DNA of 64,000 bases, taken from the NCBI GenBank assembly GCA_044892525.1, contig CM097888.1:46376001-46440000 (forward strand), given 5' to 3'. The notes below the pieces were generated by a model. That model was not told the DNA's origin. It searched no databases and saw nothing but the letters and a program-made list of their open reading frames with translations. Below, in pieces: positions 1,082-61,600 of this stretch; position 1 is the stretch's first letter, and the number at the start of each line of letters is the position of its first letter. Made by a program: the position numbers and the translations under genes. Source of the DNA: Schmidtea polychroa (Eukaryota).

Positions 1082-1660
1082 AGTTATGTATTAGAATGTT
1101 GCATTTTATTGTTTTTATGAGCGTAGTAGAATGTTATATTTTTATTGTTTTTATGATTTAAAACAAAACATCAATCACGTTTTTTTATTACTATCATTTT
1201 GTTCCCGTAGTGTTAGGGAAATGAAATGTTTAAAAAACTATTTAATAAATTTTCGCTATAGTAAAAACACAAATAGAAAAAATTTTAAAAATTCGAAAAA
1301 AAAATTACGGAGTAATTAACTACTGATTAAAATCCAGCCAAGGAACAATTAATTACAGGTTAAAATCCAGTCAAAGAACTATTAATTACAGATTAAAATC
1401 CAGTCAAAGAACTATTAATTACAGATCAAAACCCAGCCAAAGAACTATTAATTACAGATCCAAACCCAGTCAAAGAACTATTAATTACAGATCAAAATCC
1501 AGTCAAAGAACTATTAATTACAGATTAACTACAGATGAAAGTTACCCTTTCAGTGAAATACTAACTGAGGACAATTAATTAAGGTTTTTCTTTTTGTTTC
1601 TTAATAAAAGTTTAGTAACATTATTTGTTAGTTGCATTTCGTTGTTATTTTTATCATAAT
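1082..1660 (+). mobile_element. Probable 3' LTR of the degenerate Gypsy element
   Basis: A purine tract AAAGAGAGA (1073-1081) is followed by AGTTATGTA, the same start as the LTR at 56698/61009. AATAAA lies near 1603 and CATAAT near 1655 may be the end. The right boundary is uncertain. Confidence 0.4.
1315..1530. repeat. 33-bp minisatellite, about 6.5 copies
   Basis: ATTAATTACAG recurs at 1348, 1381, 1414, 1447, 1480 and 1513; unit approximately ATTAATTACAGATCAAAATCCAGTCAAAGAACT. Confidence 0.9.
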
Positions 1661-3592: not shown

Positions 3593-4449
3593 TGTTGGGT
3601 TATTGGGTTGGTGACAATGTTTGTAAATTCAAACTTTTACTTTGACTCCAAAGCGTGTTTATTAATTCATAATTCAACACTCTCGAACATGATAAGCTTC
3701 ATTAATATCCACACGGGATCGTACAAATTTCAATTACAACCAATTTATCACACTGAGCTTATTTCGACACTACGTGAAGAATAGCCCTTTCTGTAACCAC
3801 AACAATAATCACTAGTCATCAACTACTCAATTACAGGGTACGTTGATCGATTATTCTATTTGCTTTGACCACCAATTTATTTACTCCACTTCCACTTTAT
3901 ATTCAATTTTACAAAAGATTCTCGTCACTTCTCGTTTCACTCTGTCCTGAACTCTGTTTAATTCTCCCTTTGATTCTCTTCTTTAACGCTCAAAATTTAA
4001 TTCTCCTTTTAACTCTCGTTTTCTTCTTTTATTGTCTCGGTTTTTGTGTCTAATTTGGTTTTACTTTTGTTCTGATTTCTCGGTCAACTGTTCCGTTTTA
4101 TATAGTCTGTTTCATTTATGGCACTGGCAACAGATTCTGTTTTCCATTTTCCTTTTCCTCTGCGTCAGCCTTATCTCTGACAGATATCAAGATTTGCCAT
4201 GTTTTTATTTTTCATGTTGTGTCGACTTTCGCCATCTTTGACAAACCACCTTCATTTGTACTTAATTAAAAATGACCTTTGTTTTAATTTCTCGTTTGTT
4301 TTCTTTTATTTTATTTCTGTTTCTCATTTTTTATTTCTTTTTACTTCCGTTTTCTTTTCTGAGTTCCCATAGATCGTCCCGTTTGTCATGACGATTTTCC
4401 CGCAGGTAATTTATTTATTTATTATGTTATTTATCATTTAGGTATCCTC

Positions 4450-4453
<4 letters not shown>
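3593..4453. mobile_element. Solo LTR (TGTTG...CAA[C>T]A) with 4-bp TSD ATAA
   Basis: Starts TGTTGGGTTATTG and ends GGTATCCTCAATA. ATAA flanks both sides (3589-3592, 4454-4457). Both ends are homologous to the solo LTR at 47167-48171. Confidence 0.8.
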
Positions 4454-4496
<43 letters not shown>

Positions 4497-4514
4497 TAAT
4501 AATAATAATAATAT
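4450..4514. repeat. (TAA)n microsatellite
   Basis: About 21 ATA/TAA units directly visible at the right LTR end. Confidence 0.95.
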
Positions 4515-5171
4515 ACCATTGCGACATATTGAGTGGGATCAGTACCATTGTGATCATTACCCAAAAGGGGACAAAGTATCTTGTCGGATAGACACCATAA
4601 AATTAATAAATAAAAAAATATTGTTTAATTTTTTTAAACATTTAATAATGCAATATTTTTTGGTAATTAGTTTACTCGTTAAATTTAGATTGCAGCCCAT
4701 TACTTTATTTTTAATTAACATTGCTTGTTACGATATAAAAGAAGTAATTAATTTACGATATTAGAAACCATCGTTGCTTATGATACACAATTTTTACGAT
4801 ATAATTTCCATATTACGATAAGTTTTTTTACGATACAGGTAGTGGCACTCATAGAAACCTTATTTACACTAACTGTGTGAGTTGAATTCCATTAATATTG
4901 TTGGAATTCTGAAGATTTCGAACGGATTGAGATTCTTATCTGGCGCCATGTGGTTTTTTAATTAATAACACAATACCCAAAAAAAGAACAAATAAATTAA
5001 AATTTTATTATACATTTGCTATTATTCTTTATTATACTTTTAGCTAAAATATTTTAATGGGAATAAAAACATGTATGCAAACCCCATAATAAAAATAAGT
5101 AAAATATACACAGCAAGTAACAATTTCCAATAATCTTTATTTTTTGAAATACATAAAATATCAATCAACAA

Positions 5172-5960
5172 TTAAAATATCACATCATTCAAGATATTGT
5201 TCAATCTATCTTTGAGATTGTTTGGATCCGGATCATGATACATGACATACATCTCAGCGTCATAATCATTGTTCTCATCAATAGCATCAACTCCTAAATA
5301 ATACCCAAATGCACAACTTGTATTTTTTCCTACCCAGGCACGCTTATCATAATTATTTAACAATGCTATTTTAGAATTTTTAAATGTGAAAAACTGGTGA
5401 TTCCGGATTCCTATTCTAGACTGCGGTACAGAAATAATATGATTGTTATTATAGCAATCTAGATATGATTGATGGTTAATCCATGCTCATGATAATTTTA
5501 CCACCTTCGCTCTCATTATCAATTTAGGTGCTAAAATCCACCATAACACTTTGAACATAAAAAAACTCATTTATCGTATCCTAATCCCTTGCTCTCATCA
5601 TTGAACTTTCCGATAACAGAGTCGTTCCTCGAATAAAATGGGTGAGAAAAATCGTAATTTGAGGTGTCTAATAAGTAATCTGTAGTAATACATCTCATTT
5701 TAAATTTTTTATTTAAAAAAAAACTGTCAATGTCACTGGCTATTATATTGATATTGCAATTATATTGTCGTTTGAATTTCTCCAATTCATTATACTGTAG
5801 CTGGTACATCTGCAATTTAGGCAGATCTAGCACTGATTGTCCGATGCACTTAGGTCTGTCTAAACATATAGTATTTATTCAGATGAGCAGCAATCATATC
5901 ACCATCAATTCTCATGAACATAGAAGCCCATATTACCATAATGTCAAATTTGGATAAATA
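5172..5960 (-). pseudogene. Polinton/Maverick protein-primed family-B DNA polymerase, C-terminal relic (copy A)
   Basis: Reads RIDGDMIAAHLNK / TICLDRPKCIGQSVLDLPKLQMYQLQYN...IIASDIDSFF...LDTSNYDFSHPFYS...VIGKFNDE...LNNYDKRAWV...AFGYY. This matches the recalled pPolB motifs LDKPIYIG..ILDLSK..MY, YTDTDS (here degraded to DIDS), FDTSNY..HP.YS..VIGKFKDE and DDKRY...L.YGHY. Stops and frameshifts are present. Confidence 0.8.
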
Positions 5961-6166
5961 ATGAGTTCTTTCGTGATAAGTGTGAGACTACTAACGGATC
6001 AAAATCTATTTCCATAACATTAATAAATAGATGCAACGACGTAACTTCACATTTTAGGCGCACAAGGAAAATATATTTTGAGCTCCCTTTTTCAGTCGAA
6101 TGAAATAAGTTCTGAAATTATTTTTCATACAAACATATTTCTCATATTCATTTAAACATGCACATA

Positions 6167-6603
6167 TAGGCTTACCACCCGTTCGGTTTTCGCACGAACA
6201 GTTCGGTAATCAAATGAATTGTTCGTTGTTCGTTTGGCACCCAGACCGAACGTTAAAATGTTCGGTTATTGTATCAATTAATTAAATTCCATGTAAAAAA
6301 ATAAAAAAAATTAATTTAGCTTAAAAATATTGTTTTACGTTAACTTAATTCCACTACCTGTTTGTTAATAAAGTTAATAAAGTGCTAATTCTTTCATAAT
6401 GACTGATATATTTATTTAATATATTATGAAATAAAAAGTGTTAATTTTAATTTTTTGTTTTTTCGTTTTATACATTTAATATTTATATTTAAATACATAT
6501 TATAGATACACTTATTATAAAATTGATGTTTTATTTAAATTATTATTTTTTTTTAATTGGTTTGAGTGTTCGTATATCGGTCGAGAAACATGTGGTAACC
6601 CTA
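6167..6603. mobile_element. hAT-type MITE (437 bp), copy A
   Basis: TIR TAGG(C/G)TTACCAC, perfect 8-bp TSD TGCACATA (6159-6166, 6604-6611), and subterminal GTTCG repeats. Confidence 0.85.
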
Positions 6604-7311
6604 TGCACATATAAAAAACAATTTAAAAGTAAATTCTTTTTAAATTAAAGAAATATTATATTTTATATTTATAATAAAATAAATTTAAAGCTTCAAAGCT
6701 TTGATTACTTTTGCTACTCTATAACCCCACTGAATGATTGGCTATGGCAATAGAAAGCACATTAGAAGATATTGACAGGCAAGATGCAATCTTGAGGGTC
6801 TCAATTTTGAACTCTCTGTATCAGAACATTGAAGGGTTAATTGCAATAAAAGATAATTTGAAGCTACATAGTTTCTTAAGTAAGGAAAATTATAATAGTG
6901 CCATAAAATATCCAGCATTTAAATGCCGCTTTCTGAAGAGGGCTCATACAAACCTATAAGACTTGTGAACTACAGTACTCAAGGCAGTCGACATTGGCAA
7001 ATCGAATGTTTATTCTATGTGTACAGATACATGGAGTTGTTGAAAAACCTCTTTTTAACATAATAATTAGTTAATCCAAGAGCCGCTTTCGTTAAAATTT
7101 CCAACTGAAATAAGTGAAAGGTTTCCCTTTATTTTTTACCAACTGTACTGAACATTTAAGTAAATATTTATATTATTATTATTATTATTTATAATATTTT
7201 TCAAAATTTAACCTAAATACATTTATCCCTTCAATTGCAACCCCAATTAATAACTTCTCCATTTTATTATCCTACTTCTGGAAATGCTTTTTAATGCTTT
7301 TTCCAATCTTA

Positions 7312-8739: not shown

Positions 8740-9106
8740 AAAATCTCAACCCGTGTTCCGCGACCACGCTTCCAGTGTTCCGCGAAAAAAATGACATTTT
8801 ATCTTTAAATGTGCATTTAAGATACATATCATCAAAAACCTCAATTAATTTTTTTATAAGATGATTCAATAAGAAAGCCGTTACACAGATATATAAACAT
8901 ACAAATGTAAAAGTGTTTTTATTGCTTGTTATTGTTGCGCGTGGTATTTTCTTTGCTTATAAGAAGGCATTGTTTACGTTTACGACAGATTTATAGTAAT
9001 TTGTGATTGGTCACTCATTGTGCGCAAGTATGTTTTTATCAGTGTTCCGCGTAAAAAAAATCATGTGAATGGTGTTGCGTGCTTTTATATTAATTGAGAA
9101 CCACTG
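8740..9106. mobile_element. Charlie/Buster-like hAT MITE with degenerate left end
   Basis: Right end TTGAGAACCACTG, degenerate left end ..CTCAACC, and repeated subterminal GTGTTCCGCG. No clear TSD. Confidence 0.5.
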
Positions 9107-9851
9107 GCTTAAATTATCACTTTATTGTTTTAAATAATAAATGCTGCTACCANNNNNNNNNNNNNNNNNNNNNNNNNNNNNNNNNNNNNNNNNNNNNNNN
9201 NNNNNNNNNNNNNNNNNNNNNNNNNNNNNNNNNNNNNNNNNNNNNNNNNNNNNNNNNNNNNNNNNNNNNNNNNNNNNNNNNNNNNNNCAGCAAAAAGGCG
9301 AAGTGAGTCCATGTATATTTGTATAATTACATATCAATTCAGAACTTTGATTTTGTCTTTTTGAAAGGATAGCTCAACAATTACTGTTTGGATTCCTTGA
9401 AAATTTTTAAAAAAAATTATATATCATTAAAACATTTAATTACCTCAGATTAATTTTAGGAGCGTCTGGTAATTGGCGATATAAAATAATAAAGTTTGAA
9501 AATAATCCCGAAATACAGCATATTGCTATCATTATCATATTGAACACGAATACATAATTCATCTAAAATATTCATCTAAAATATTAATATTAAAATAATA
9601 AAGATTTTAAAAATACTGAAGAAAATTTAAATAATCGAAAAACAATTATCCAAGAAATAACAAAAATTATTTTATAAATAAAAAACCCAATAAATTTGTT
9701 TTTCTAAATGTAAAATATAATAAAAACGATTTAAAAAATTTAAAAACTAATTAAAAAGATTTTAAACCAATAAAAAAATTGCAACAAATTTATATTCAAA
9801 TCCAGTCACTATTTAAAATGAGAAAATCTTAGATAATTTAATGAACTTTTC

Positions 9852-11340
9852 ACAGGCGAGAATTTATTAAAATTTTGGATTCTTGGTTCATTTTCTCAGA
9901 TTTTGCACAGATTCTTCGGGTTTCAATGGTATTTGGGTTTGGATTCTTTCTCTGATTTTCAAACTTTCTGAAAAGATAATAATTCTTTTTATTAAATTTG
10001 TTTAAATTTAATAAAACTTTGGATTCTTGGTTTAATTTCTCAGATTTTGCACAGATTCTTCGGGTTTCAATGGTATTTGGGTTTGGATTCTTTCTCTGAA
10101 TTTCAAACTTCCTGAATGGATAAAATTTCTTTTTATTAAATTTGTTTAAATTTAATAAAACTTTGGATTCTTGGTTTAATTTCTCAGATTTTGCACAGAT
10201 TCTTCGGGTTTCAATGGTATTTGGGTTTGGATTCTTTCTCTGATTTCCAAACTTTCTGAAAAGATAATAATTCTTTTTATTAAATTTGTTTAAATTAAAA
10301 AAACTTTGGATTCTTGGTTTAATTTCTCAGATTTTGCACAGATTCTTCGGGTTTCAATGGTATTTGGGTTTGGATTCTTTCTCTGATTTCCAAACTTTCT
10401 GAAAAGATAATAATTCTTTTTATTAAATTTGTTTAAATTAAAAAAACTTTGGATTCTTGGTTTAATTTCTCAGATTTTGCACAGATTCTTCGGGTTTCAA
10501 TGGTATTTGGGTTTGGATTCTTTCTCTGATTTCCAATCTTTCTGAAAAGATAATAATTCTTTTTATTAAATTTGGATTCTTGGTTTAATTTCTCAGATTT
10601 TGCACAGATTCTTCGGGTTTCAATGGTATTTAGGTTTGGATTCTTTCTCTGATTTTCAAACTTTCTGAATGAATAATAATTCTTTTTATTAAATTTGTTT
10701 AAATTTAATAAAACTTTGGATTCTTGGTTTAATTTCTCAGATTTTGCACAGATTCTTCGGGTTTCAATGGTATTTGGGTTTGGATTCTTTCTCTGATTTT
10801 CAAACTTTCTGAAAAGATAATAATTCTTTTTATTAAATTTGTTTAAATTTAATAAAACTTTGGATTCTTGGTTTAATTTCTCAGATTTTGCACAGATTCT
10901 TCGAGTTTCAATGGTATTTGGGTTTGGATTCTTTCTCTGATTTTAAAACTTTCTGAAAAGATAATAATTCTTTTTATTAAATTTGTTTAAATTTAATGAA
11001 ACTTTGGATTCTTGGTTTAATTTCTCAGATTTTGCACAGATTCTTCGGGTTTCAATGGTATTTGGGTTTGGATTCTTTCTCTGATTTTAAAACTTTCTGA
11101 AAAGATAATAATTCTTTTTATTAAATTTGTTTAAATTTAATAAAACTTTGGATTCTTGGTTTAATTTCTCAGATTTTGCACAGATTCTTCGGGTTTCAAT
11201 GGTATTTGGGTTTGGATTCTTTCTCTGATTTTAAAACTTTCTGAAAAGATAATAATTCTTTTTATTAAATTTGTTTAAATTTAATAAAACTTTGGATTCT
11301 TGGTTTAATTTCTCAGATTTACCACAGATTCTTCGGGTTT
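9852..11340 (-). repeat. 144-bp tandem array (10 full units plus one partial), inverted relative to the array inside ORF 14546-15997
   Basis: GGATTCTTGG at 9877, 10021, 10165, 10308, 10451, 10574, 10718, 10862, 11006, 11150 and 11294. Two units are 143 bp and one has a 21-bp deletion. It is the reverse complement of the ORF repeat; three units carry GAA>TAA in the coding frame. Confidence 0.95.
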
Positions 11341-11815
11341 GTTTGTTCGGGTAATTTACCTAATTAAATTCAGTGATGACTTTATTTGAAAGATCTGAAC
11401 TTTAATTTACTTATTTGAGCCTGTAATTTACTTATATAACTTTAATTTAATTTTTACACTATTGATTACCTGATTAAAAATTTGTATCTTAATTTATTTT
11501 AATTTAACCATTTATTTACTGAATTTAACATTTGTTTACAAATATTATTTAATTTACTTTTTATCCTTAATTTACCTATTTATCCCTTGTATTACTTAAT
11601 TTAGCGTTTTACAACATAATTTACTTAACAACCGAATAACCCTTATTTACATATTTAACCAATAATTTCATGTAGTGAATTATTACTTAACAAAGATTTG
11701 CATCTAAAATTAACATTGAAAAATATTTCATAAAAACTTTCATCTTAAATTGAATTTGAGATTAATTTAATAAAAATTTCCATTTTAAATTGATTCTGAA
11801 AAATATTTCATAATA

Positions 11816-14132
11816 CAGGTAGTCCTCGACTTACCACCGAGATATGGACAGGAGCAACGGTCGTATGTTGAGTTGGTCGTAAGTCGAGTTCATATAAAAA
11901 AAAATAAATAAAAAAAGAACAAAAATATAAACGGATTATTAGAAGCAAAATACAAATTCATAGTTCAGTCTTTATTTAAAATTATAATAAAAAGCCATGA
12001 ATACATTTATATTAAATAAATTAAATTAAAATTACATGTTTACTTGTTCTCGTCATCCGAACTTATCACATTAATATAATCCATTGAGTTATCTTGAACA
12101 ACTGCACCTTCAGTGGCAGTTTTTAAAAAAAACCTGTCTAATGTTGTTTGCACACTTTGAACTTTCATTTCGCTATAAATTGCATAATAACATGCCATAT
12201 TTTCCTCAATAAGCTTATTTACTTTTGTAAATCTTTCCTCATTAGCATCCATTTCTTCCAATTTTTGCATTCCCTGATGAATTTGGTGAAAAGCTGCAGA
12301 CATTTCTTTTGCCGAAAAATTTTTTTGTGGCATTTCTTCCTCGTCTGATTCGCTTTCATACGCAACACATTGTGCTTCAAGATTCAATAAATCTTCAGTC
12401 GTTAGATTATCTACATGGTATTCAATAAGTTGGTTAATATCTGCATTGTCAACATCAAGATTAAGTTGCTTATCAAGCTCTACGATCTGAGCGGTAATTT
12501 GTTCAATGCCAATTTCGCTTTCAATTGTCGAACTGACATTCTCTTGAAGTCGCTTTGTTAGATTTTTCCATATTCCACTCATACAAGAAGGTCTGACCTC
12601 TTGCCATCCACCTGCTATGTTTTTAATTGCTTGAAGCATATTATATTTCGACCAAAATTCTTTTAGAGTGATCTCATCTTCAAGTGCTTTAATTGCTTGA
12701 CTAAATGTGATTTTCAAATAGTGAGCCTTAAATGTAGCAATAGCTCCCTGATCCATTGGCTGTAAAATACTGGTGGTATTTGGGGGTAAATACATAATTT
12801 TTATGTTCGGTGAAAGATCGCCAAGATATGTGGGTGTCCAGGTGCATTATCCAGTAATAAGAGGATTTTTAAAGCAATGCCCTGTCGATTACAATATTCT
12901 TTTACTTCAGGCGCAAATACCTTCATAAACCAGTTTTCAAAAAGTAATTGCGTCATCCAAGCATTTTTATTTGTGCGGTAATGTACTGGTAACATATTGA
13001 TATCCACTCCTTTAAATGCTCTTAGTTTTCTTGATCGATGTATTACAAGAGGTTTCAATTAATACCCAGCAATATTTCCGCCCAATAAAATTGTGATACG
13101 ATCTTTATGTGCCTTAAAACCTGGCATACGTTTTGCTTCCTTATGAATGTACGTACGATCAGGCATTTTCTTCCAATAAAGCGCGGTTTCATCAACATTA
13201 AAAATTTGTTCGTTGGTATAATTTTCTTCTTGAAGGAAATCATCGAATTTAGCTACAAAATCCTCAGCAGCTTTATTATCAGCACTGCCTGCCTCTCCAG
13301 AGATTTTTACATTTTGTAAATTCGCTCGTTTCCTAAATTTTTGAAACCAGCCGTTACTTGCAATGAATGTCTGATCATGGCCTTCCCCTCCCTTTAATTT
13401 CAACATTTCAAAAAGACTTAGAGCTTCAGTTTTGATAATTGCGAGGCTAAGAGGAATTTGTTTTATGATCAAATCCTCCATCCAAATCACCAACAACTTT
13501 TCCATTTCATGCATGGCCCCTTGCCTTTTTTTGGTTATAACTGTAGATTGCATACATGCTGATTCTCGAACTGCTTTTAAAATTCGATCTTTATCTTTTA
13601 AAATTGTTGAGATTGTTGAATGGGATAGTTTAAAGGCATGCGCTATGTCTTTCACCTTTTTACCACTATCATGCTCTTTAATTAACTTATGTTTCATTTC
13701 TAAATCTATAGCACTTCTCTTATTTTTTCTACTTCTATTATTCACAGACATTTTTGGGATAAAAAAATTATTCACTTTTAAAAAATTAAAATGGCTACTC
13801 AATTAGGCCTTTTTTAGCCTTTAAATTTTTGATATGACAGATAAATTTATGCTGTCGTTTTGTTTTTAAATTAGTTGTAGCTAAACAATTTAAAAGTGCT
13901 GAATATTTTTTACGGCTTGCTAATTTAATTTTTTACTAATTCTAAATTTGTTTTTGTTGTTAAAAACTAAAATAGTAGGTAACTTATAAAATTAATAGTG
14001 TTTAATTAAGGAAAATTAATTGGTTTAATTTTTTAGTTCGGTTCGAAACAAAAATCAGGCCCATTGGGAAAAATAATTTTAGGAAATAATTTTGGTCGTA
14101 AGTCCGAACCGTCGTAAGTCGAGGACTACCTG
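11816..14132 (-). mobile_element. Full-length Tigger/pogo-family DNA transposon (2317 bp)
   Basis: 19-bp TIR CAGGTAGTCCTCGACTTAC, TA TSD (11814-15, 14133-34), and an internal transposase. Confidence 0.95.
12040..13802 (-). pseudogene. Tigger/pogo (CENP-B-like) DDE transposase, disrupted
   Basis: HTH-psq/CENP-B HTH (HSTISTILK, ASNGWFQKFRKR), FNVDETALYWKKMP, LLLLDNAPGHP and YLPPNTTSILQPMDQG. There is one premature TAA at 13059-13061 (AGY*LKPLVI) and one frameshift near 12800-12830. Confidence 0.92.
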
Positions 14133-14545
14133 TAAATTTAAAAATCTTACTTTAATTTACTTATTTAACTTTTATTCAAATATTTTGACCATTGATCACT
14201 TAATTCAAAAATCTGAAATTTAATTTAATTTGATTCAAAAATTTGGACCATAATTTACTTTAATTTCAAATTTGAACCTTAAATTGACTTTGAAATTAAT
14301 TTAATAAAAATTTCCATTTTAAATTGTCTTCAAAAATTATTTCATAAAAATATTTATTTAAAAATTTCAATTCTCACCGACTATTATTCTAACTTTTAGT
14401 TATTAAATTTAAAAATATTATTTCAATTTAATTATTTAATAAATTTAATAAAAACAATTATTATCCAATCAGAAAATTAAAAAATCAAAACAATTCAAAC
14501 AAAATCACTATTTAAACTAAAAGAATATGTTATAAATCATATAAA

Positions 14546-15997
14546 ATGAACGAAAAAAACAAAGCTGTAAAAAATTTTAAATTCTTAAATAGATTTAATA
14601 AAAAGAATTTTTATCAGATTAGAACGAAATTAGAAAATCCAAAGATTTCAAATTTAAAAACTATTGAAACTAAAAGATTATGTGATAAACCACATAAAAT
14701 GAACCAAGACCCCAAAGTTGTAAAGAATTTTAAAGTCTTAAATAGATTTAATAAAAAGAATTTTTATGCGATCAGGACAAAATTAGAAAATCAGAAATCC
14801 GAAAAAGTATGTTCAAAGTCTATAAAATTGAACAAAGAATCGAAAAAAATGTTAAACATCGATATGAACGTTAGTCAACTGCAATCCAGTAATCCCTGTG
14901 GTAACAAGGGAGTGGCAAAAAGCATAGAAAAGGATGAAAAAATTCAAATTTCAAACAAAATCTATACCTTCTATGAGGAAAATACCAAAGATAAAATTTT
15001 GAACATCGTTACGAACGCCAGTTATTTCTGTAATAACAAAGGCGTGGCAGAAAGCATAGTAAATGTTAAAAAAATATCAAAATCAGAGAAAAGGAAGGAA
15101 ATTTTAAAAGATTTCAATATATTTAATAAAAAGAACTTTTATCCTGTCAGAAAGTTTGAAAATCACAATAATAATCCAAACCCAAATACCATTGAAACCC
15201 GAAAAATCTGTGCAAAATCTGAGAAATTAAACCAAGAATCCAAAGTTTTATTAAATTTAAACAAATTTAATAAAAAGAATTATTATCTTTTCAGAAAGTT
15301 TGAAAATCAGAGAAAGAATCCAAACCCAAATACCATTGAAACCCGAAGAATCTGTGCAAAATCTGAGAAATTAAACCAAGAATCCAAAGTTTTATTAAAT
15401 TTAAACAAATTTAATAAAAAGAATTATTATCCATTCAGAAAGTTTGAAAATCAGAGAAAGAATCCAAACCCAAATACCATTGAAACTCGAAGAATCTGTG
15501 CAAAATCTGAGAAATTAAACCAAGAATCCAAAGTTTTATTAAATTTAAACAAATTTAATAAAAAGAATTATTATCTTTTCAGAAAGTTTGAAAATCAGAG
15601 AAAGAATCCAAACCCAAATACCATTGAAACTCGAAGAATCTGTGCAAAATCTGAGAAATTAAAACAAGAATCCAAAATTTTATTAAATTTAAACAAATTT
15701 AATACAAAGAATTATTATCTTTTCAGAAAGTTTGAAAATCAGACAAAGAATCCAAACCCAAATACCATTGAAACCCGAAGAATCTGTGCAAAATCTGAGA
15801 AATTAAACCAAGAATCCAAAGTTTTATTAAATTTAAACAAATTTAATAAAAAGAATTATTATCTTTTCAGAAAGTTTGAAAATCAGAGAAAGAATCCAAA
15901 CCCAAATACCATTGAAACTCGAAGAATCTGTGCAAAATCTGAGAAATTAAACCAAGAATCCAAAGTTTTATTAAATTTAAAAATTTATTTACTTTGA
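14546..15997 (+). CDS. 483-aa basic Lys/Asn-rich orphan repeat protein (48-aa unit), 3'-truncated by inserted DNA
   Basis: 1452-bp ORF. It has about 5.5 homogeneous 48-aa units (FNKKNYYLFRKFENQRKNPNPNTIETRRICAKSEKLNQESKVLLNLNK), preceded by about 190 aa with older diverged in-frame units that show synonymous-biased changes. The stop lies in the LTR-derived duplicated block. Confidence 0.5.
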   Translation: MNEKNKAVKNFKFLNRFNKKNFYQIRTKLENPKISNLKTIETKRLCDKPHKMNQDPKVVKNFKVLNRFNKKNFYAIRTKLENQKSEKVCSKSIKLNKESKKMLNIDMNVSQLQSSNPCGNKGVAKSIEKDEKIQISNKIYTFYEENTKDKILNIVTNASYFCNNKGVAESIVNVKKISKSEKRKEILKDFNIFNKKNFYPVRKFENHNNNPNPNTIETRKICAKSEKLNQESKVLLNLNKFNKKNYYLFRKFENQRKNPNPNTIETRRICAKSEKLNQESKVLLNLNKFNKKNYYPFRKFENQRKNPNPNTIETRRICAKSEKLNQESKVLLNLNKFNKKNYYLFRKFENQRKNPNPNTIETRRICAKSEKLKQESKILLNLNKFNTKNYYLFRKFENQTKNPNPNTIETRRICAKSEKLNQESKVLLNLNKFNKKNYYLFRKFENQRKNPNPNTIETRRICAKSEKLNQESKVLLNLKIYLL

Positions 15998-16956
15998 ATT
16001 CAAAGCGTGTTTATTAATTATAATTCAACACTGTCGAACACAATAAGCTTTATTAATATCCACACGGGATCGTACAAATTTCAATTACAACTAATTTATC
16101 ACACTGAGCTTATTTCGACACTACGTGAAGAATAGCCCTTTCTGTAACCACAACAATAATCACTAGTCATCAACTACTCAATTACAGGGTACGTTGATCG
16201 ATTATTCTATTTGCTTTGACCACCAATTTATTTACTGCACTTCCACTTTATATTCAATTTTACAAAAGATTCTCATTTCACTCGGTCCTGATCTCTGTTT
16301 AATTCTCCCTTTGATTCTCTTTTTTATCGCTCAAAATTTAATTCTCCTTTTAACTCTCGTTTTCTTCTTTTATTGTCTCGGTTTTTGTGTCTAATTTGGT
16401 TTTACTTTTGTTCTGATTTCTCGGTCAACTGTTCCGTTTTATATAGTCTGTTTCATTTTTGGCACTGGCGACAGATTCTGTTTTCCATTTTCCTTTTCCT
16501 CTGCGTCAGCCTTATTTCTGACAGATATCAAGATTTGCCCTGATTTTCTTTTTCATCACTGCTTATGATACACAATTTTTACGATATAATTTCCATATTA
16601 CGATAAGTTTTTTTACGATACAGGTAGTGGCACTAATAGAAACCTTATTTACACTAACTGTGTGAGTTGAATTCCATTTAAATTGTTGGAATTCTGAAGA
16701 TTTCGAACGGATTGAGATTCTTATCTGGCGCCATGTGGTTTTTTAATTAATAACACAATACCCAAAAAAAGAACAAATAAATTAAAATTTTATTATACAT
16801 TTGCTATTATTCTTTATTATACTTTTAGCTAAAATATTTTAATGGGAATAAAAACATGTATGCAAACCCCATAATAAAATTAAGTAAAATATACACAGCA
16901 AGTAACAATTTCCAATAATCTTTATTTTTTGAAATACATAAAATATCAATCAACAA

Positions 16957-17818
16957 TTAAAATATCACATCATTCAAGATATTGTTCAATCTATCTTTGA
17001 GATTGCTTGGATCCGGATCATGATAGATGACATACATCTCAGCGTCATAATCATTGTTCTCATCAATAGCATCAACTCCTAAATAATACCCAAATGCACA
17101 ACTTGTATTTTTTCCTACCCAGGCACGCTTATCATAATTATTTAACAATGCTATTTTAGAATTTTTAAATGTGAAAAACTGGTGATTCCGGATTCCTATT
17201 CTAGACTGCGGTACAGAAATAATATGATTGTTATTATAGCAATCTAGATATGATTGATGGTTAATCCATGCTCATGGTAATTTTACCACCTTCGCTCTCA
17301 TTATCAATTTAGGTACTAAAATCCATAACACTTTGAACATAAAAAAACTCATTTATCGTATTGCTCTCATCATTGAACTTTCCGATAACAAAGTCGTTCC
17401 TCGAATAAAATGGGTGAGAAAAATCGTAATTTGAGGTGTCTAATAAGTAATCGGTAGTAATACATCTCATTTTAAATTTTTTATTTTAAAAAAAAACTGT
17501 CAATGCCGCTGGCTATTATATTGATATTGCAATTATATTGTCGTTTGTATTTCTCCAATTCATTATACTGTAGCTGGTACATCTGCAATTTAGGCAGATC
17601 TAGCACTGATTGTCCGATGATGGTAATGAATTTGTAATGGTTTAAAGCAGGGGTTTCAAACTCAAACTGGCCTGCGGGCCGCATTAGACTAGTATTATGA
17701 GCCGGCGGGCCGCAACATAAATAATTTTTTTTCAGAACATGTGGAGTCTGAAACTCCGACGTTAATATTTATTTAATTAAAAACTCAACAAAACTAAAAA
17801 ACATTTTTTTATTATTAA

Positions 17819-17856
<38 letters not shown>

Positions 17857-18125
17857 TGTATAACGTCATATGTATAAATAAAAATAATTAAAAAGATAAG
17901 TTTTAATTTATACAGCCAATTATGATTTTAATTGTTAAATAAGTTTGGTTAAATTACAAATCTATGTTTTTTCGTTGCGGGCCGCCAAATGTAACGCAAC
18001 GGGCCACGTGTTTGAGACCCCTGGTCTAAACATATAGTATTTATTCAGATGAGCAGCAATCATATCACCATCAATTCTCATGAACATAGAAGCCCATATT
18101 ACCATAATGTCAAATTTGGATAAAT
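16957..18125 (-). pseudogene. Polinton pPolB relic (copy B), interrupted by a MITE
   Basis: ORF 16957-17148 is nearly identical to 5172-5363, and IGQSVLDLPKLQMY lies in ORF 17481-17684. Confidence 0.75.
17648..18023. mobile_element. Charlie/Buster-like hAT MITE (376 bp) with internal (TAA)n
   Basis: TIR CAGGGGTTTCAAAC / GTTTGAGACCCCTG and subterminal GCGGGCCGC repeats. Flanks GTTTAAAG and GTCTAAAC match at 6 of 8 positions. Confidence 0.85.
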
Positions 18126-18332
18126 AATGAGTTCTTTCGTGATAAGTGTGAGACTACTAACGGATCAAAATCTATTTCCATAACATTAATAAATAGATGC
18201 AACGACGTAACTTCACATTTTAGGCGCACAAGGAAAATATATTTTGAACTCCCGTTTTCAGTCGAATGAAATAAGTTCTGAAATTATTTTTCATACAAAC
18301 ATATTTCTCATATTCATTTAAACATGCACATA

Positions 18333-18769
18333 TAGGCTTACCACCCGTTCGGTTTTCGCACGAACAGTTCGGTAATCAAATGAATTGTTCGTTGTTCGTT
18401 TGGCACCCAGACCGAACGTTAAAATGTTCGGTTATTGTATCAATTAATTAAATTCCATGTAAAAAAATAAAAAAAATTAATTTAGCTTAAAAATATTGTT
18501 TTACGTTAACTTAATTCCACTACCTGTTTGTTAATAAAGTTAATAAAGTGCTAATTCTTTCATAATGACTGATATATTTATTTAATATATTATGAAATAA
18601 AAAGTGTTAATTTTAATTTTTTGTTTTTTCGTTTTATACATTTAATATTTATATTTAAATACATATTATAGATACACTTATTATAAAATTGATGTTTTAT
18701 TTAAATTATTATTTTTTTTTAATTGGTTTGAGTGTTCGTATATCGGTCGAGAAACATGTGGTAACCCTA
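18333..18769. mobile_element. hAT-type MITE (437 bp), copy B
   Basis: Same element and same TGCACATA TSD as 6167-6603. Confidence 0.85.
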
Positions 18770-19546
18770 TGCACATATAAAAAACAATTTAAAAGTAAAT
18801 TCTTTTTAAATTAAAGAAATATTATATTTTATATTTATAATAAAATAAATTTAAAGCTTCAAGCAGAGGTTCAAAATTCAACCTACTTTTCTAGCTAAAA
18901 GATTTATAGATAATTTCGAATCGGTCAGATACTGTGGTGATCTATTAGACAGAGGTCCAACAAAAGGATTTTAATTATGAAAAAATTTTTTGTTGCAATT
19001 TTGTAAAATAGTTTTAAATAATATTGTATCATAAATTTTCTAAACAAAATCATTTCAAAAATTTGTCTGACTAAACACAAATTTAAGTTTTTTTAATTTA
19101 AATTTTTACTCTACATAATAATTATGAGAATAAATTAAATTTCATTTTATCATTTTTACAATTTACAAATAAACTTTTAATGTAAAACTTTGAAAATTTT
19201 AAATACAGTTTGTACTAAAAAACTCATTACAATGTAAATTTGTGCAATTAAATCAAAAGAAAAAGAAAATTTAAGTAAAAAGAAAACTTTTTAAATTAAG
19301 AAATCAACCTTGATATTGTTTTATGTATTAATAAAATTTCATATATCTTTGCGTTATGTATACTTAAAAATTTTACGAACTGATTTCTTTTGTTTTATAC
19401 GATAATGTATTAGGTTGAAAATTTAATTTTTACTTGTAATATTCTTATAACGAAATTTGTTTTAATAATAGGAGAAATCCTTTCAATTTTAATTAATAAT
19501 TTTTTTAATTTGTAATATCATTTTATATATTTATATATATTTTTAA

Positions 19547-55600: not shown

Positions 55601-58600
55601 CTAAACACGTTAAACACTCATATGAGTGTTCAGAAAGAGAACTAGGCTAGAGCGAAAAACTCAAATATTTTATGGTTATTAACGTTAAATATATGTTAAC
55701 TTCCTCTCAGAATTATTATAAATTGATTAAGATCCGAAGAATCCGATCCACTGGATCTTGCCGGATCGGGTACCCGCATTTACATCCTTAATTTTAATCA
55801 AATTTAAAGTGAGATAATTTTTCGAAGGTCCTTATATTCGAATATATTCAAAAAAATAATTGAAGAATGTGATTAACTTTAGTGATGACAAATTTAATTT
55901 TACACTTTTAGGGATGAAAATATTTTTCTACAACCAATTGAGTGAAGTTAAATTTATGTTTAAAAATTGTTGAGATTTCCTGTAGTGGGATAGCTGCCTA
56001 CAGTGGCCCTGTATTTGCCTATGATTTTTGGTTTGTTAAGTATAATTTATTTTCCCACCAAAGATTAATATTATTTTACTATTTTGTTTATTAGATGTGA
56101 AATATTCTTAATTGCGACTTCTCTTAATAATAAAATTAATTTCCAAATTTTAATTTTTGATCTATAGTAATAATGAAAATAAATGACATTAAAAGAAAAC
56201 ATCAAAAGTGACCAAAAAAAATAAAAGATTTTACAAAGTTCCAATATCTTTCTTTTTAAAAAATCTTTTTTTAATTTTAAAACAAATAGATTTTATATAG
56301 AAAGTTTAATGGAAATAATCGAACACTGTAATTAGGAACCTCCTATTAAGTGAAAATTTAAGCAACAACTTGTCATATAATAAATTATATAATAATCATA
56401 ATAAAATTCCATATTCGGTCATTTTAAAGATAGAAGAATAAAAAATTCAGTTGAAAAAATTCCTAAACAAATTAAAAAATCTGAAAGGTAAAATTAAAAT
56501 TACAGAAAGCAATTTTAAAGAAATTTAAATGTCAAAAGAATTCTTAATTAAAAAAAATTAAAAAGAACAAAATTTTAATTGAAAAAAATTGATTTTAATA
56601 AAAAATTAGAACTAGAGTTTTTCATTTGCTAGTGTGACCTTGACATTTAATATTGTTAATTTCTAATTTAATCGTGATTTTATGATTTTATTATATCAGT
56701 TATGTAAAGTTTTGTTTGAATAATATTCGTATTAGTGTGTTTTTGAAAAATATATTTTATTGAATTATTATTGATTTATTTTATGAATTTAGAAGTTGAG
56801 GACATCATAACTGGCGACCACGCCAAGGAAATCAATGCGATAGGAAAAAAGAAAGGAACTAAGAATATGTTAGATTCCTTGTCAAAACAAGCACGTGAGA
56901 TGCTAAATTTTAATGTCAGAAAGTTTGACGGAAAAGTTGGATCTGAAGCTGAACTTTGACTAAAGGATATTATGGAATGGCTGAGAATAGAAGATCAAAG
57001 TCTAGTAGACGCATTGGATCTTTTGTTGACAGATGCGGCATCGATGTTATGGGAAGCGGCGAAAATAGCGAAGATGACCGATGAAATGGCAAAAGAGTGG
57101 TTTATAGAAACTTTTACAGTAAGGTAAACCATTACTAACAAGATTGTGGAACTAGCTCAAATTCAGCAAGAGAGAGATGAAAGATTCCAAGTCTTCGAAA
57201 TACGAGTAAGAAGTTTAGTTAAAAGTGTATTTAGCTCTGGAATGTCTGATGAACAGATTGTTCGAGACATTATCTCAAACAGAGCGAAAGACGATAGAGT
57301 AAAAGAAATATTCTTATCAGGGAAAGTGACAAGTTTTGAAGATGCCAGGGATATGGCAAAAATTCAGGAGAAGATCGAGATGACGAATGACAATAAATTC
57401 AATATTGATGCCATAAGAAGAGACTCCTACGCATCAGTGATGAAAAATGGTAAATTCGAGGGTAGACGAGACCAAAGAACAATTGTGAAGACAACTGCAC
57501 ATCAACGCGACGAACACCGAGAGATTAATCATGAGAGGAATAGACCTGGTAATGGTCGATTTGTACCAATTGTAAATGAAGACAAGATTGAAAATGAGCG
57601 GTATAGAGGACGATATGAGACAGGAGAACCAGAGAGAAGAATACCTACAGTATCGCTTAAAGATATTGCAAGAAGGTTATTTAATGACAGCAAAGGAAGA
57701 AATTCGCCTCATCCAGTGAAACTGACACCAGGTCAGTGTTTTTGTTGTGGAGAAAAAGGGCACCGGCGTTTTGAATGTCCTATGAAAGACAAATGTCTAA
57801 TCTGTGGAAAAGAAGGTCATGGATTCAGAGATTGTTTTTTGCTTAAAAATAGAAATGGATATCAGAAGAGAGTGGCATGTATTTACGAAGAAGATCACGA
57901 AAGAAATAATGGTGATTTAACAGAAGATTTATACAGTAATTACGAAGAAACGATAAAAAAATCAATGGATAAACCAAAAAACAAGGACGATCCCATTGCT
58001 TTCATTTCGTCAGTGGGGTCGACACAATAATCAGTAGAAAGAAGTGAAATGAAGACATGATGCAGAAGATGTATGAGACGACAGACAGAAGAAAGTGGAG
58101 TAAGATTGTAATAAACATGACGGCGGAGCAATGACGATAGAAGCTGATTGGAATGGGAAAAAAAGAATTATTAATGTTATAGTTGTCAAAGATATACGTC
58201 CAGATTTCATTGGGGGTGTAGATACAATGGAGAGATTTGGTATTCAACTGGTAGAGGTAGACAATATTGAAGCGTCACAAGTAGGGAGGACATATGTGGA
58301 CTCACAACGAGAAGAGAAAGCATTATTAATGCTTGGAGACAGGAAGAATGAACAGTTAGACATATTGCTACGGAAGTTCAAAGGTATTTTTATGGCTTCA
58401 ACTTTTGATCTCGGGTTTACGAAAGTTGTTCAGCATGAAATGAATATAGTAGGTGGGCCTGTAATGTTACAGCCAAGAAGACAACCAATGCATTTAGAAC
58501 AAAAGCTTGACGAACTTGTCACAAACTTATTAGAAGCGAGAGTTATTAGGAAATGCAAAAGGGCATGGAACGCGCCACTAGTGATTGTGGCTAAGAAAGA

Positions 58601-61600
58601 TGGATCAATAAGGATGTGTGTCGACTATAGAGGATTGAATGCGATCACTGAAAAGATATCTTTTCCAATGCCAGATACACGATTTCTACTGGATTGTCTG
58701 GCAGATTCAAAATATTTCACATCCATCGATCTAGGTCAAGCATATTATCAAGTTGGAATGGCGAAGGAAATTCAAGAGGTCACGGCTTTCAGTACAAGGC
58801 AAGGACAGTTTTGTTTTAACCGACTTCCTTTTGGACTAGCAACAGCCCCTGCGACGTTTCAAAGAATGATGCACTCAATGTTGGATGGAATATTATTTAA
58901 GGGTGTTGTTGTCTACCTCGACGACATTCTTGTCTATGGAAAAGACATAGAGGAACACAATAACCGATTAGAGGAAGTATTCAGAAGAATTCAACTAGCG
59001 GGGTTGAGAATTAACCCAGAAAAATGTAATCTGTATAAAGAAGAATTGACATTTCTAGGGCACACTGTAAGTGCAAGTGGGATAAAAACGAACGACAAGA
59101 AGATTAAAGAGATTCAAGATGCAGAAATACCAGTATGCGCCAAACAATTAAGATCCTTTTTAGGTATGACCAATTACTATAGGAAGTTTATAAAAGACTA
59201 TGCGAAAATTGCGGAACCTCTACATGAAGCTACGTCTGGCTGTGAGAAAAAGATTAATTGGTCAGAAGATTGCAACAATAGTTTTGAATTACTTAAAACA
59301 AAGTTGTGTGAAGCTCCAATTCTAGATTACCCAAGAATGGATAGAAACTTTATTCTGGATACAGACGCTAGTTTTGGGGCCATCGGAGCAGTTTTATGTC
59401 AAGCTAAAGAAGATGGTACTGAAGTAGTAATTGCATATGGGTCGAGACACTTGACCGCACATGAAAAAGGTTATTGTGTGACTAGGAAGGAGTTACTTGC
59501 TATACACGAATATGTAATGTATTTTAAACAATATTTATACGGAAAGTCATTTGTAGTACGAACGGATCACAAGGCGTTGGTTTTCATGAGATACACAAAA
59601 AAACCGATAAGCCCGCAATTTCAAACCTGGCTAGCCAACCTTTCCGGATATGATTTCGATCTTCAATATAAGAAAGGAGAGGAACATGGAAATGCGGACG
59701 GAATATCAAGGATTAAAGGGATGCTATGTGCACAATGCCAGACTAGACATGAAGACGCAAAAGAAGAAAAAGCCAGAGTAAGACATATCAGCTCATTACA
59801 GAAGACTGAGTCGATGACAAAACTCTTAGAAAAGCAACAAGATGATGTAGATTTCATTCACATGACAAGAGTGTTACAGGGAGAAGAGAAAAAAGATGAC
59901 TTGAATAAAAAGAAATTTCCTTTCAATTTGCATAACAACATAAAATTAGAAGATGGGTTTTTATTATTAGAGAAGAATGGTAAAGATGTCATCCTGGTGC
60001 CGATAGACTACTCAAATACGTTAGTTAAAGGTATACATACTGAAATGTGTCACATTGGAGTAAAGAAATTAATTAGCTATATGAGCAACATATTTTTTTG
60101 GCCAAACATGCAAGAAACTATACAAAACTGTTTGAGAGTATGTGAGATATGCTGCAGAAGGAAAATAGTGCAGGAGAAGACAAAGGAACGATTGTTGCCG
60201 ATAATAAGTTCAGAATTTTTAGAACAGTTGGTCATTGATATAGCACACATGAAGAATGGTGGAGTGTACAAGTATATGCTAGTTATCATTGATCGTTTTA
60301 GCAAAATGGTCAGTCTGACCGCACTGGAGAGACAAGACGAGAGATCGATTTTCAAAGCCATATTGGAGAAGTGGATATACCGTTTCGGAAAACCGCGAAA
60401 TTGTCTGTCAGACAGAGGGAAGAACTTCGATAGTGGTTTTATGAAAACAAATCTAGGAAGACTGGGTATTACGCAACAGTTCAGTTCACCATATCAGCAT
60501 CAATCTAACGGTTTAGTTGAGAGAACAATACGGACAGTCAGAGACTTGTTGGCGACATCATTAGCAGGTGGACTAGGAGAGCGAAATTGGGCGGAGTTAC
60601 TTCCTCGAGTAGAATTTTGTATCAACGTGACACAACAGAGCGCGACGGGATTTTCTCCATTTGAAATTGTTTTTGGGAGGAAGATTAACCTTCATTCAAC
60701 ATTGCCTCAGACGACATTGGATACAGTTGAGATACATAGATTGGTAAGAGAGAACAGTGAGAAAGCAGCTAAACGAATGAAAGAGATGGAAACAGAGAAG
60801 AGAACGAATCGATGTTTCACGGTGGGGGAGAAAGTATTAGTTCGGAAAGAACCACAAAATCGCGACAAAGATGGACTACAGTATGAAGGTCCGTTTGTCA
60901 TATCAAAGTTTTTGTCAGAACACCAGGTGGAATTGAGTGACGGGACGACAAAGAAACTCAGACGAATTGAATGGCTTAAGAGATGGGCAGTTCCTTAAAG
61001 AAGGAGAGAGTTATGTAAAGTTTTGTTTGAATAATATTCGTATTAGTGTGTTTTTGAAAAATATATTTTATTGAATTATTATTGATTTATTTTATGAATT
61101 TAGAAGTTGAGAACATCATAACTATATCAACTTTTTTAATTATCAATAATTTTCTCTGAAAAAATCATATAACTAAACTTTAATCAAAAGTTTTATTAAA
61201 TATTTAATAATAATTATAAAATAATTATCCAATTATAATAAACACTATTTAATCTCAAGGTCACGCGAATACATGAAAACTCTATTATTTTAGTTTTAAT
61301 GAAATGTAATTTTTCCAAAAATAAAATTAATTTACCTTTAAATAATGGACTGATCGACCATACAGTAATTGGACCGAGACTGGCAAATTGACCAAATGCT
61401 AACTCCATAAAAAATAATGGTAATCCGACTAGAAATAACATGGAAAAATAGGGAACGAGAAAAGCTCCTAAATTATCAGCAAATAATGTTTGTTTAGAAT
61501 AGTGAAACTTTTCAACTCACCACCCCCATTTTTATAACACAAATATGGAAATCTCCAGACATTTCCCAACCCAACTGCCATGGCAACACATGAGCAAAGA

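What the first reader, a model, noticed from the sequence alone, without database searches (positions are those of the whole stretch)
14546..15997. Orphan 48-aa-repeat protein with a signature of protein-level selection in its oldest repeats
Seen: a 483-aa ORF whose 3' half is a homogenised 144-bp array and whose 5' 190 aa hold older diverged units (FNKKNFY..R.K.EN...TIET.R.C.K..K.NQ) that stay in frame. Comparing the two oldest units (about 14560-14640 vs 14713-14793) shows synonymous changes ATT/ATC, AGA/AGG, ACG/ACA and AAA/AAG against three replacements over about 26 codons, more synonymous than expected for neutral satellite DNA. A second internal duplication (CGNKGVAKSI / CNNKGVAESI) is also present. 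Degenerate copies of the unit occur upstream of the ATG and at 9600-9850. Inference: a lineage-specific, strongly basic, repeat-expanding protein gene family (a DNA/chromatin- or microtubule-binding scaffold is one guess), or a satellite that originated from, or gave birth to, a coding gene. No known domain was recognised.
Basis: partly seen in the sequence, partly recalled or inferred. Interest (0 to 1): 0.7.

Follow-up and report, generated by a model that had tools for sequence, protein, structure and literature searches.

The report
Abundant satellite DNA with an open frame
The 483-codon "gene" is the one stop-free reading frame of a very abundant 144-base satellite repeat in a planarian genome, and its many copies change without regard to that frame, so it is most likely ordinary non-coding satellite DNA and not a new protein family.

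Summary
The ORF (14546-15997, +) is real, and so is its layout: decayed repeat units at the 5' end and a homogeneous 144-bp array at the 3' end. It is not a lone gene. The genome, probably Schmidtea polychroa schPol2, holds at least 24,500 copies of the 144-bp unit (at least 3.5 Mb) and about 190 copies of the 5' "head". These form kb-scale macro-units: spacer modules, head, array, inverted array.

In this window an inverted array (9861-11340) carries TAA stops and frameshifts. A decayed Tigger/pogo element (11816-14132) sits in the spacer. The ORF's stop codon lies in an unrelated 565-bp interspersed repeat.

- **Heads:** 126 copies give omega about 0.94, with changes spread evenly over codon positions.
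- **Array units:** about 390 units carry stops, frameshifts and synonymous changes at the rates mutation alone predicts.
- **Relatives and fold:** none among 1.8 billion representative proteins, no confident predicted fold, no mRNA-like coverage.

Verdict: a neutrally evolving satellite whose consensus happens to be, or once was, open. One thing stays unexplained: the head consensus is more open than shuffled sequence (P<2e-4), so a coding origin is possible. The scan noted this stretch before as a "foldback-like composite"; that reading is rejected.

The parts
9861..11340 (-). Inverted copy of the 144-bp satellite array, about 10 units. It cannot code: three units carry TAA in the ORF-equivalent frame (10862-11293), two units are 143 bp and one is 123 bp.
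11341..11815 (+). Spacer module of the satellite macro-unit. It is repeated in tandem, about 860 bp apart, in other copies of the family.
   Evidence: 89-96% matches in L033-L035, directly abutting the 'pre' spacer there
11816..14132 (-). Secondary insertion of a Tigger/pogo DNA transposon (2,317 bp). It has TIRs starting CAGGTAGTCCTCGACTTAC and TA duplications at 11814-11815 and 14133-14134. The transposase is broken by one in-frame stop and one frameshift. It is not part of the repeat family.
   Evidence: empty site in L033; extra G after 12829 in other copies
14135..14411 (+). Proximal spacer ('pre') made of short AT-rich sub-repeats. In the DNA run it is as abundant as the array itself.
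14412..15098 (+). The 'head': decayed satellite units U0 (14444-14593, with an in-frame TAA), U1 (14594-14746) and a partial U2 (from 14747), then about 78 codons barely recognisable as units that hold a 123-bp internal duplication. About 190 copies in the genome at 91-94% identity.
14546..15997 (+). The 483-codon open frame. It starts at the first ATG after the TAA in U0 and ends at a TGA inside the neighbouring interspersed repeat.
15099..15981 (+). Homogeneous 144-bp (48-codon) satellite array, 6 units, all open in frame.
15990..16555 (+). Unrelated interspersed repeat of about 565 bp (1,518 first-look candidates genome-wide). It abuts the array and supplies the last codons and the stop of the ORF. 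It is also the start of a 3-kb segment duplicated from 3636-6696.

Best explanation
This is a copy of an abundant satellite DNA family, probably of Schmidtea polychroa. The basic unit is 144 bp, which equals 48 codons. In one of its six frames the consensus has no stop codon, so any homogeneous array reads as a long ORF. The family is built from kb-scale macro-units: tandem spacer modules, a 'head' of old decayed units at the inner edge of the array, a direct array, and an inverted array. I infer that these macro-units spread by unequal exchange and segmental amplification. The window holds one isolated, older macro-unit (93% identical to the rest). A Tigger element later landed in its spacer, and the outer end of its array is joined to an unrelated repeat that supplies the stop codon. 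The copies diverge without regard to the reading frame, so the ORF is a by-product of repeat structure and youth, not a protein kept by selection. Shown: the anatomy, the copy numbers, and the neutral pattern of variation. Inferred: the mode of amplification and the absence of function.
For: - **Copy number:** the unit 26-mer has 24,567 hits and the head 26-mer has 191. Arrays occur on many contigs.
- **Macro-unit layout and empty Tigger site:**
- **Left arm in this window:** it carries TAA in 3 units, has two 143-bp units and one 123-bp unit.
- **Array variants, first sample:** 134 events, syn 17 / non 109 / stop 8, against neutral 23.6 / 100.5 / 9.9. Codon positions 48/43/43.
- **Array variants, second sample next to 20 other heads:** 12 / 64 / 5 against 14.7 / 60.5 / 5.8. 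13 of 120 units have frameshifted lengths.
- **ORF ends in those 20 arrays:** 12 stop at a nonsense or frameshift change while the array runs on.
- **Heads:** 126 copies, 277 parsimony events, syn 61 / non 203 / stop 13 against 57.2 / 201.9 / 17.9. Omega about 0.94, codon positions 100/81/96, control frames 0.96 and 1.04.
- **The window's own 31 changes from the family consensus:** 7 syn / 24 non against 6.4 / 22.6 expected.
- **Chance of an open unit:** 21.5% of dinucleotide shuffles of the unit have at least one of six frames open.
- **No relatives:**. Pfam gives only summed weak repeat hits.
- **Not protein-like:** Atlas recognition 760; AF2 mean pLDDT 36.5.
- **Runs guessed to be RNA (not on record as such):** contigs cover the array and the non-coding spacer roughly in line with their abundance in the DNA run, and hardly touch the head. 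The Tigger has 1.1-1.2-kb contigs.
Against: - The head consensus is open over 184 codons. Dinucleotide shuffles average 14 stops (P<2e-4). For the 78 codons that barely resemble units, P=0.003. Descent from open units explains only part of this.
- On internal tree branches of the heads there is 1 stop-type change against 5.1 expected (P=0.027).
- Three of four indel length classes in the heads are multiples of 3 (21, 15 and 12 bp, against one of 2 bp).
- Smaller, consensus-based counts gave a frame-specific excess of synonymous changes (P=0.004-0.016).
- One cluster-rich sample of head-side arrays had no stop variants (P=0.004).
- 145 of 150 scored heads have no stop, and open frames reach 4,876 codons.
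- The RNA evidence comes from contigs of runs whose RNA status is only guessed. It cannot exclude tissue-specific expression.
Confidence: 0.75

Rival explanations
1. Relic of a coding sequence. The satellite grew from the internal 48-residue repeats and an adjoining part of a lineage-specific gene, or of an exon fragment. The open frame is inherited from that gene, and the copies now drift neutrally. This agrees with the best explanation about the present and differs only about the origin.
For: The head consensus is far more open than shuffles (P<2e-4 overall; P=0.003 for the non-unit-like 78 codons). The unit lengths 144, 150 and 153 bp and the 123-bp internal duplication are all multiples of 3. 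There is a faint lack of stops on internal branches. Earlier notes of this scan (AI notes, not checked here) describe other satellites in this genome built from gene fragments.
Against: No parent gene or relative turned up in the word-based search or in the HMMER search of 1.84 billion representatives. The composition is what AT-rich DNA translates to (FYMINK 51%). The finding was picked because it is a long ORF, so some surprise at its openness is expected.
Confidence: 0.3
2. A working multi-copy gene family. At least some macro-units encode a basic protein with an N-terminal head and a variable number of 48-residue repeats. The repeat part tolerates truncation, and the big arrays elsewhere are dead offshoots.
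For: 145 of 150 scored heads are intact and open frames reach 4,876 codons. 119 of 126 sampled heads are intact. Internal branches show 1 stop against 5.1 expected, with omega about 0.76. Young clusters on C4 and C12 have no stop variants on the head side.
Against: Overall omega is about 0.94 with a flat codon-position spread. Arrays next to heads evolve neutrally and are often cut by nonsense or frameshift changes. Differences between array subfamily consensus sequences are nearly all replacements. The head is almost absent from the runs guessed to be RNA, while the spacer is covered. There are no relatives, the protein-language-model recognition is low, and the predicted fold has pLDDT 36.5.
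Confidence: 0.1
3. A foldback-like or transposon composite. The two inverted arrays would be long terminal repeats of a mobile element that carries the Tigger transposase. This was the earlier first-stage note on this stretch.
For: Inverted arms 10568-11340 and 15195-15967 are 97% complementary and flank a transposase gene.
Against: The Tigger has its own TIRs and TA target duplications at 11814/14133, inside the spacer. Other macro-units show the same spacer uninterrupted. The inverted-array layout recurs across the family without any Tigger.
Confidence: 0.02

Closest known systems
Classical satellite DNA with higher-order or nested organisation and decayed monomers at array edges (for example primate alpha satellite, by general knowledge; nested tandem repeats over 1 Mb were reported for the S. 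mediterranea assembly in PMC11410931)
   Same: Tens of thousands of near-identical monomers. Megabase-scale clusters. Local homogenisation that also spreads stop-bearing and frameshifted variants. Older diverged monomers at the array border. Clusters near the middle of C4.
   Different: The monomer length is a multiple of 3 and the consensus is stop-free in one frame, so arrays read as ORFs of up to thousands of codons. The macro-unit also holds a fixed head and an inverted array. No centromere association was tested.
Macrosatellites that carry an ORF in each kb-scale unit (human D4Z4/DUX4, RS447/USP17; from general knowledge)
   Same: A tandem kb-scale unit (here 4.6-13 kb) with an open frame in most copies and a variable repeat number.
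   Different: Those ORFs belong to known protein families and are expressed. Here there is no recognised domain, no relative, omega about 1, and no mRNA-like coverage.
Satellites built from gene fragments in this same genome (earlier scan notes s1-220125 and s1-204269, kinase-derived arrays)
   Same: Same genome, and the same idea of a tandem array that may descend from coding sequence and is now non-coding.
   Different: No parent gene or founder copy was found for the 144-bp family, so its coding origin is only a possibility.
Tandemly amplified coding genes such as Drosophila Stellate/Su(Ste) (general knowledge)
   Same: Hundreds of tandem copies carrying an ORF. Lineage-specific.
   Different: Stellate derives from a known gene (CK2 beta) and is transcribed. 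Here nothing shows expression or constraint.

Membership tests
Satellite DNA | Head-to-tail tandem arrays of one monomer, in very high copy number | tested here: met
   TRF finds period 144 with 96-98% matches. The unit 26-mer gives 24,567 hits spaced 144 bp apart. Arrays occur on C2, C3, C4 and many unplaced contigs.
Satellite DNA | Local homogenisation: variants, including disabling ones, spread to neighbouring units | tested here: met
   The same TAA variant sits in 3 adjacent units of the left array. The same stop variants recur through the C2:39.77 Mb array. One shared frameshift variant appears in five sampled arrays and a closely similar one in two more.
Satellite DNA | No sequence constraint tied to a reading frame | tested here: met
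   Array variants match neutral expectation in two samples. Heads give omega about 0.94 with codon positions 100/81/96.
Protein-coding gene family | Purifying selection on the frame (omega below 1; fewer stops and frameshifts than mutation predicts) | tested here: not met
   overall. The only faint hint is on internal branches: 1 stop against 5.1 expected, P=0.027. Smaller consensus-based tests with P=0.004-0.016 did not hold up in the tree-based count.
Protein-coding gene family | Relatives or a recognisable domain or fold | tested here: not met
   No hits in the word-based search or in phmmer against 1.84 billion representatives. The head has no Pfam family and the array gives only summed weak repeat scores. 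AF2 pLDDT 36.5. Atlas recognition 760.
Protein-coding gene family | Transcription as an mRNA that covers the ORF | tested here: inconclusive
   In the runs guessed to be RNA, only short contigs lie on the array and spacer, and one 251-nt contig at depth 3 lies on the head. The data are contigs only, the RNA status is a guess, and the tissues are unknown.
Foldback-like or TIR transposon composite | The inverted arrays are the element's termini, with target-site duplication outside them | tested here: not met
   The Tigger has its own TIRs and TA duplications inside the spacer. Empty sites exist in other macro-units.
Tigger/pogo DNA transposon (the inserted element only) | CENP-B/HTH_Tnp_Tc5 DNA-binding domains plus a DDE_1 catalytic domain, TIRs and a TA duplication | tested here: met
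   Pfam: HTH_Tnp_Tc5 2e-11, CENP-B_N 2e-5, DDE_1 2e-18 and 1e-14. TIRs and TA read directly from the sequence.

The most novel reading that the evidence does not exclude
About 190 macro-units of this satellite still encode, or did until very recently, a lineage-specific, strongly basic protein: a roughly 190-residue head followed by a variable number of 48-residue repeats. The 3.5-Mb 144-bp satellite would then be the runaway expansion of that gene's own internal repeats. That would be a gene and a satellite evolving as one entity, possibly a chromatin protein that binds the repeat encoding it.
Probability: 0.1. Interest if true: 0.75.

Novelty: new member of a known kind. Interest (0 to 1): 0.27.

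Why it matters
As it stands this is a caution. In AT-rich genomes, a satellite whose period is a multiple of three and whose consensus lacks stops can mimic very long "orphan repeat-protein" genes. Such ORFs should be tested against the variation among their genomic copies before being called genes.

It also describes a major satellite family (at least 3.5 Mb, unit plus macro-unit structure) that is probably from Schmidtea polychroa. I found no description of it in the searchable literature. It lies near the middle of chromosome-scale contig C4, so it may be useful for work on planarian centromeres and genome structure.

If the minority reading were right, it would be a rare case of a satellite born from, and still carrying, a coding gene.

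Tried and rejected
Checked on the named segment and on the whole period. Not significant.
- **Pairwise NG86 dN/dS.** Values of 0.3-1.1 in the ORF frame, but the same range in the two control frames, so uninformative.
- **Consensus-based event counts on 28-66 heads.** These gave a frame-specific synonymous excess (P=0.004-0.016). With 126 heads and parsimony on a tree the excess vanished (omega 0.94), so I do not rely on it.
- **'No stops on the head side'** in the first array sample (P=0.004). Not replicated in 20 further loci.
- **L023's second head copy (79% identical, still open).** It turned out to be partly converted to array-type units, so its openness is inherited. It was left out of the counts.
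- **Pfam hits** to Xin, DUF2252 and DUF2673. These are sums of weak repeat matches and no single stretch passes.
- **Other searches with nothing usable.** Atlas feature hits all below 0.9. AF2 without an alignment gave no usable model, so no fold search was run. Rfam found nothing in 9000-19000. Exact-sequence look-ups for the ORF found no record. Literature searches found no description of this satellite.
- **Assembly gap.** The N stretch near 9150-9290 was left alone.

Full report
**What is at the coordinates**

The ORF 14546..15997 (+) is 483 aa. Its 3' part is a 144-bp tandem array at 15121-15981, with 6.0 copies and 96% matches. Cut at the FNKKN motif, the frame shows the following:
- six 48-codon units;
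- before them, U1 (14594-14746, 51 codons) and a partial U2 (from 14747);
- then about 78 codons barely recognisable as units, holding the CGNKGVAKSI/CNNKGVAESI duplication 123 bp apart;
- upstream of the ATG, a further unit U0 (14444-14593) in the same frame with an in-frame TAA.

The start is therefore simply the first ATG after a stop in a decayed unit. That Met is a consensus residue of the genome-wide unit (…SEKMNQES…). The translated sequence has pI 10.1, K 18%, N 17% and FYMINK 51%, which is what A-rich DNA of 24% GC translates to.

**Surroundings in the window**

- A second array of the same unit lies inverted at 9861-11340. The arms are up to 773 nt long and 97% complementary.
- Read in the ORF-equivalent frame, three units of that array carry TAA (KF*NQ). 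Two units are 143 bp and one is 123 bp. The same satellite 4 kb away is therefore not coding-competent.
- Between the arrays sits a Tigger/pogo element at 11816-14132. It has HTH_Tnp_Tc5, CENP-B_N and DDE_1 domains, TIRs starting CAGGTAGTCCTCGACTTAC, and TA duplications at 11814-11815 and 14133-14134.
- Its transposase is broken by one in-frame stop and one frameshift. Other copies carry an extra G after 12829.
- In other copies of the family the two spacer halves (11341-11815 and 14135-14411) abut directly. The Tigger is therefore a later insertion. The earlier "foldback-like composite" note on this stretch does not hold.
- At the 3' end the array stops at about 15987 against an unrelated interspersed repeat of about 565 bp. 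That repeat has 1,518 first-look candidates, all starting at the same base.
- The repeat opens a 3-kb segment duplicated from 3636-6696. The ORF's last codons and its TGA come from this junction, not from a conserved gene end.

**Genome-wide picture**

The assembly has 781,270,316 bp in 1,012 contigs. That is one contig and about 20 kb short of schPol2, the Schmidtea polychroa assembly in Table 1 of PMC11410931. An earlier scan note calls the genome a planarian. The species name is an inference from these figures.

- A 26-mer of the unit has 24,567 hits at up to 1 mismatch, which means at least 3.5 Mb. A 26-mer of the head has 191 hits.
- Heads are 91-94% identical to the window copy and much closer to one another.
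- The family is built from macro-units: tandem spacer modules about 860 bp apart, the proximal spacer, the head, 4-10 or more units, a short inverted spacer, and an inverted array. These repeat every 4.6-13 kb in clusters on C2, C3, C4 and many unplaced contigs.
- The window copy is an isolated, older macro-unit at the midpoint of C4 (46.4 of 93.1 Mb).

**Is there protein-level selection?**

It has 4 synonymous and 3 replacement codon differences, made of 8 nucleotide differences split 2/2/4 by codon position. The whole 153-nt period splits 17/16/21, with 5 synonymous and 24 replacement differences. The two control frames look alike. This is not significant.

Arrays.
- In 238 ungapped units, 134 distinct variants split syn 17 / non 109 / stop 8. 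The expectation from the observed mutation spectrum is 23.6 / 100.5 / 9.9. Codon positions are 48/43/43.
- 23 of those units carry stops, and 18 of 266 have lengths that are not a multiple of 3.
- One subset, the head-side arrays of young clusters, had no stop variants (P=0.004).
- A second sample next to 20 other heads did not repeat this. It gave 12 / 64 / 5 against 14.7 / 60.5 / 5.8, and 13 of 120 units were frameshifted.
- Of those 20 ORFs, 5 end at nonsense codons and 7 at frameshifts while the array continues. Three are broken at the head and 5 run to the locus edge.
- Differences between subfamily consensus units are nearly all replacements.

Heads.
- Small consensus-based samples suggested a frame-specific synonymous excess (P=0.004-0.016).
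- I then fetched every head in the contig-ordered first 100 lines of the 191 pattern hits. That list is not chosen by frame.
- With 126 copies (67 unique), I counted changes by parsimony on a FastTree tree. The 277 events split syn 61 / non 203 / stop 13 against 57.2 / 201.9 / 17.9. Omega is about 0.94, P(syn) is 0.30, and codon positions are 100/81/96. The control frames give 0.96 and 1.04.
- Terminal branches are exactly neutral, with 12 stops against 12.8 expected.
- Internal branches show 1 stop against 5.1 (P=0.027) and omega 0.76 (P=0.09). A control frame gives a similar omega, so this is a hint at most.
- Seven of the 126 heads are broken.
- The window copy's own 31 changes split 7 syn / 24 non, against 6.4 / 22.6 expected.

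Most copies are open because the family is young: 183 copy-specific changes across 67 unique 583-nt heads.

**Other evidence on coding**

- No relatives: the word-indexed search scored 8,000 candidates with none significant. phmmer against 1.84 billion representatives gave no hit at E up to 0.001. The exact sequence is on no record.
- Pfam: the head matches nothing, and the array gives only summed weak repeat scores.
- Atlas recognition is 760, in the range of shuffled sequences. AF2 on a single sequence gives mean pLDDT 36.5 and pTM 0.16.
- Sequencing runs: four runs of unrecorded type hold 22-34% of the sampled words. The one that was laid (X1) covers every bin and behaves like a DNA run. 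The runs guessed to be RNA hold almost none.
- Laid on 12000-15400, those RNA-guess runs cover the array and the non-coding spacer only with short contigs, roughly in line with their abundance in the DNA run. The head gets one 251-nt contig at depth 3, or nothing. The Tigger is covered by 1.1-1.2-kb contigs.
- This does not look like an mRNA of head plus array. But these are contigs, the RNA status is guessed and the tissues are unknown.

**How it most likely works**

The 144-bp unit is 48 codons long, and one of its six frames is stop-free. Among dinucleotide shuffles of the unit, 21.5% have at least one open frame. Any homogeneous array is therefore automatically a long ORF, and open frames up to 4,876 codons occur in the genome. 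Arrays expand, contract and homogenise by unequal exchange and conversion; this is inferred from the shared stop and frameshift variants. Units at the array's inner edge escape homogenisation and decay, giving the head. The whole macro-unit was then amplified to about 190 copies.

**What remains unexplained**

The head consensus has no stop in 184 codons. Shuffles average 14.2 stops, and none of 5,000 was open. For the 78 non-unit-like codons, P=0.003. All unit-length differences and three of four head indel length classes are multiples of 3. Descent from open units and the fact that the finding was picked for its long ORF explain part of this. A coding origin remains a fair possibility (about 0.3), while present function seems unlikely (about 0.1).

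**Comparison and novelty**

This is a new member of a known kind: a satellite with nested, macro-unit organisation. In layout it resembles ORF-bearing macrosatellites such as D4Z4, but it fails the tests for a protein-coding family (constraint, relatives, fold). The expression test was inconclusive. I found no published description of this family.

**Verdict**

The "signature of protein-level selection" is not supported. Interest is low to moderate.

Noticed in passing
window 11816-14132 (-): A Tigger/pogo transposon with TA target duplication and TIRs of about 20 bp. Its transposase is broken by one in-frame stop (at 13059-13061) and one frameshift near 12829. Contigs of 1.1-1.2 kb from a run guessed to be RNA cover it, so the family may be transcribed.
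   Followed up: partly
window 15990-16555 and 3636-4215: An interspersed repeat of about 565 bp with 1,518 first-look candidates genome-wide at 78-89% identity. All copies start at the same base, like a short non-autonomous mobile element or a solo LTR. It was not classified.
   Followed up: partly
window 3636-6696 vs 15988-18862: A direct segmental duplication of about 3 kb at 95-99.8% identity, with a roughly 550-bp extra piece in the first copy. An assembly gap (N) lies between the copies near 9150-9290, so a local assembly artefact cannot be excluded.
   Followed up: no
window 57146-60998 (+): An LTR-retrotransposon Gag-like ORF (zinc knuckle) and an intact 955-aa Pol with RVT_1, RNase H and integrase domains.
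   Followed up: partly
L002:509-1345 (-) = G000 C4 about 61.804 Mb: A 279-aa ORF with a parvovirus-type phospholipase A2-like domain (PF08398, 3e-8), followed by sequence that looks integrase-like by eye. It is inserted into a 144-bp array and cuts that copy's ORF at 291 aa. The element type was not determined.
   Followed up: partly
window 14166-14279 and spacer modules in L033-L035: The AT-rich spacer sub-repeats of the macro-unit are as abundant as the 144-bp unit in the DNA run. In one run guessed to be RNA they are the best-covered part, at depth 560. They form a second satellite-like component, with modules about 860 bp apart.
   Followed up: no
window 1315-1528: An unrelated 33-bp tandem repeat, 6.5 copies, 91% matches.
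   Followed up: no
G000 C4:9882427 (+), C4:48662492 (-), C25:273160 (+): Open frames of 4,876, 3,348 and 2,977 codons start at heads of this family, implying very homogeneous arrays of 60-100 units with no stop or frameshift.
   Followed up: no
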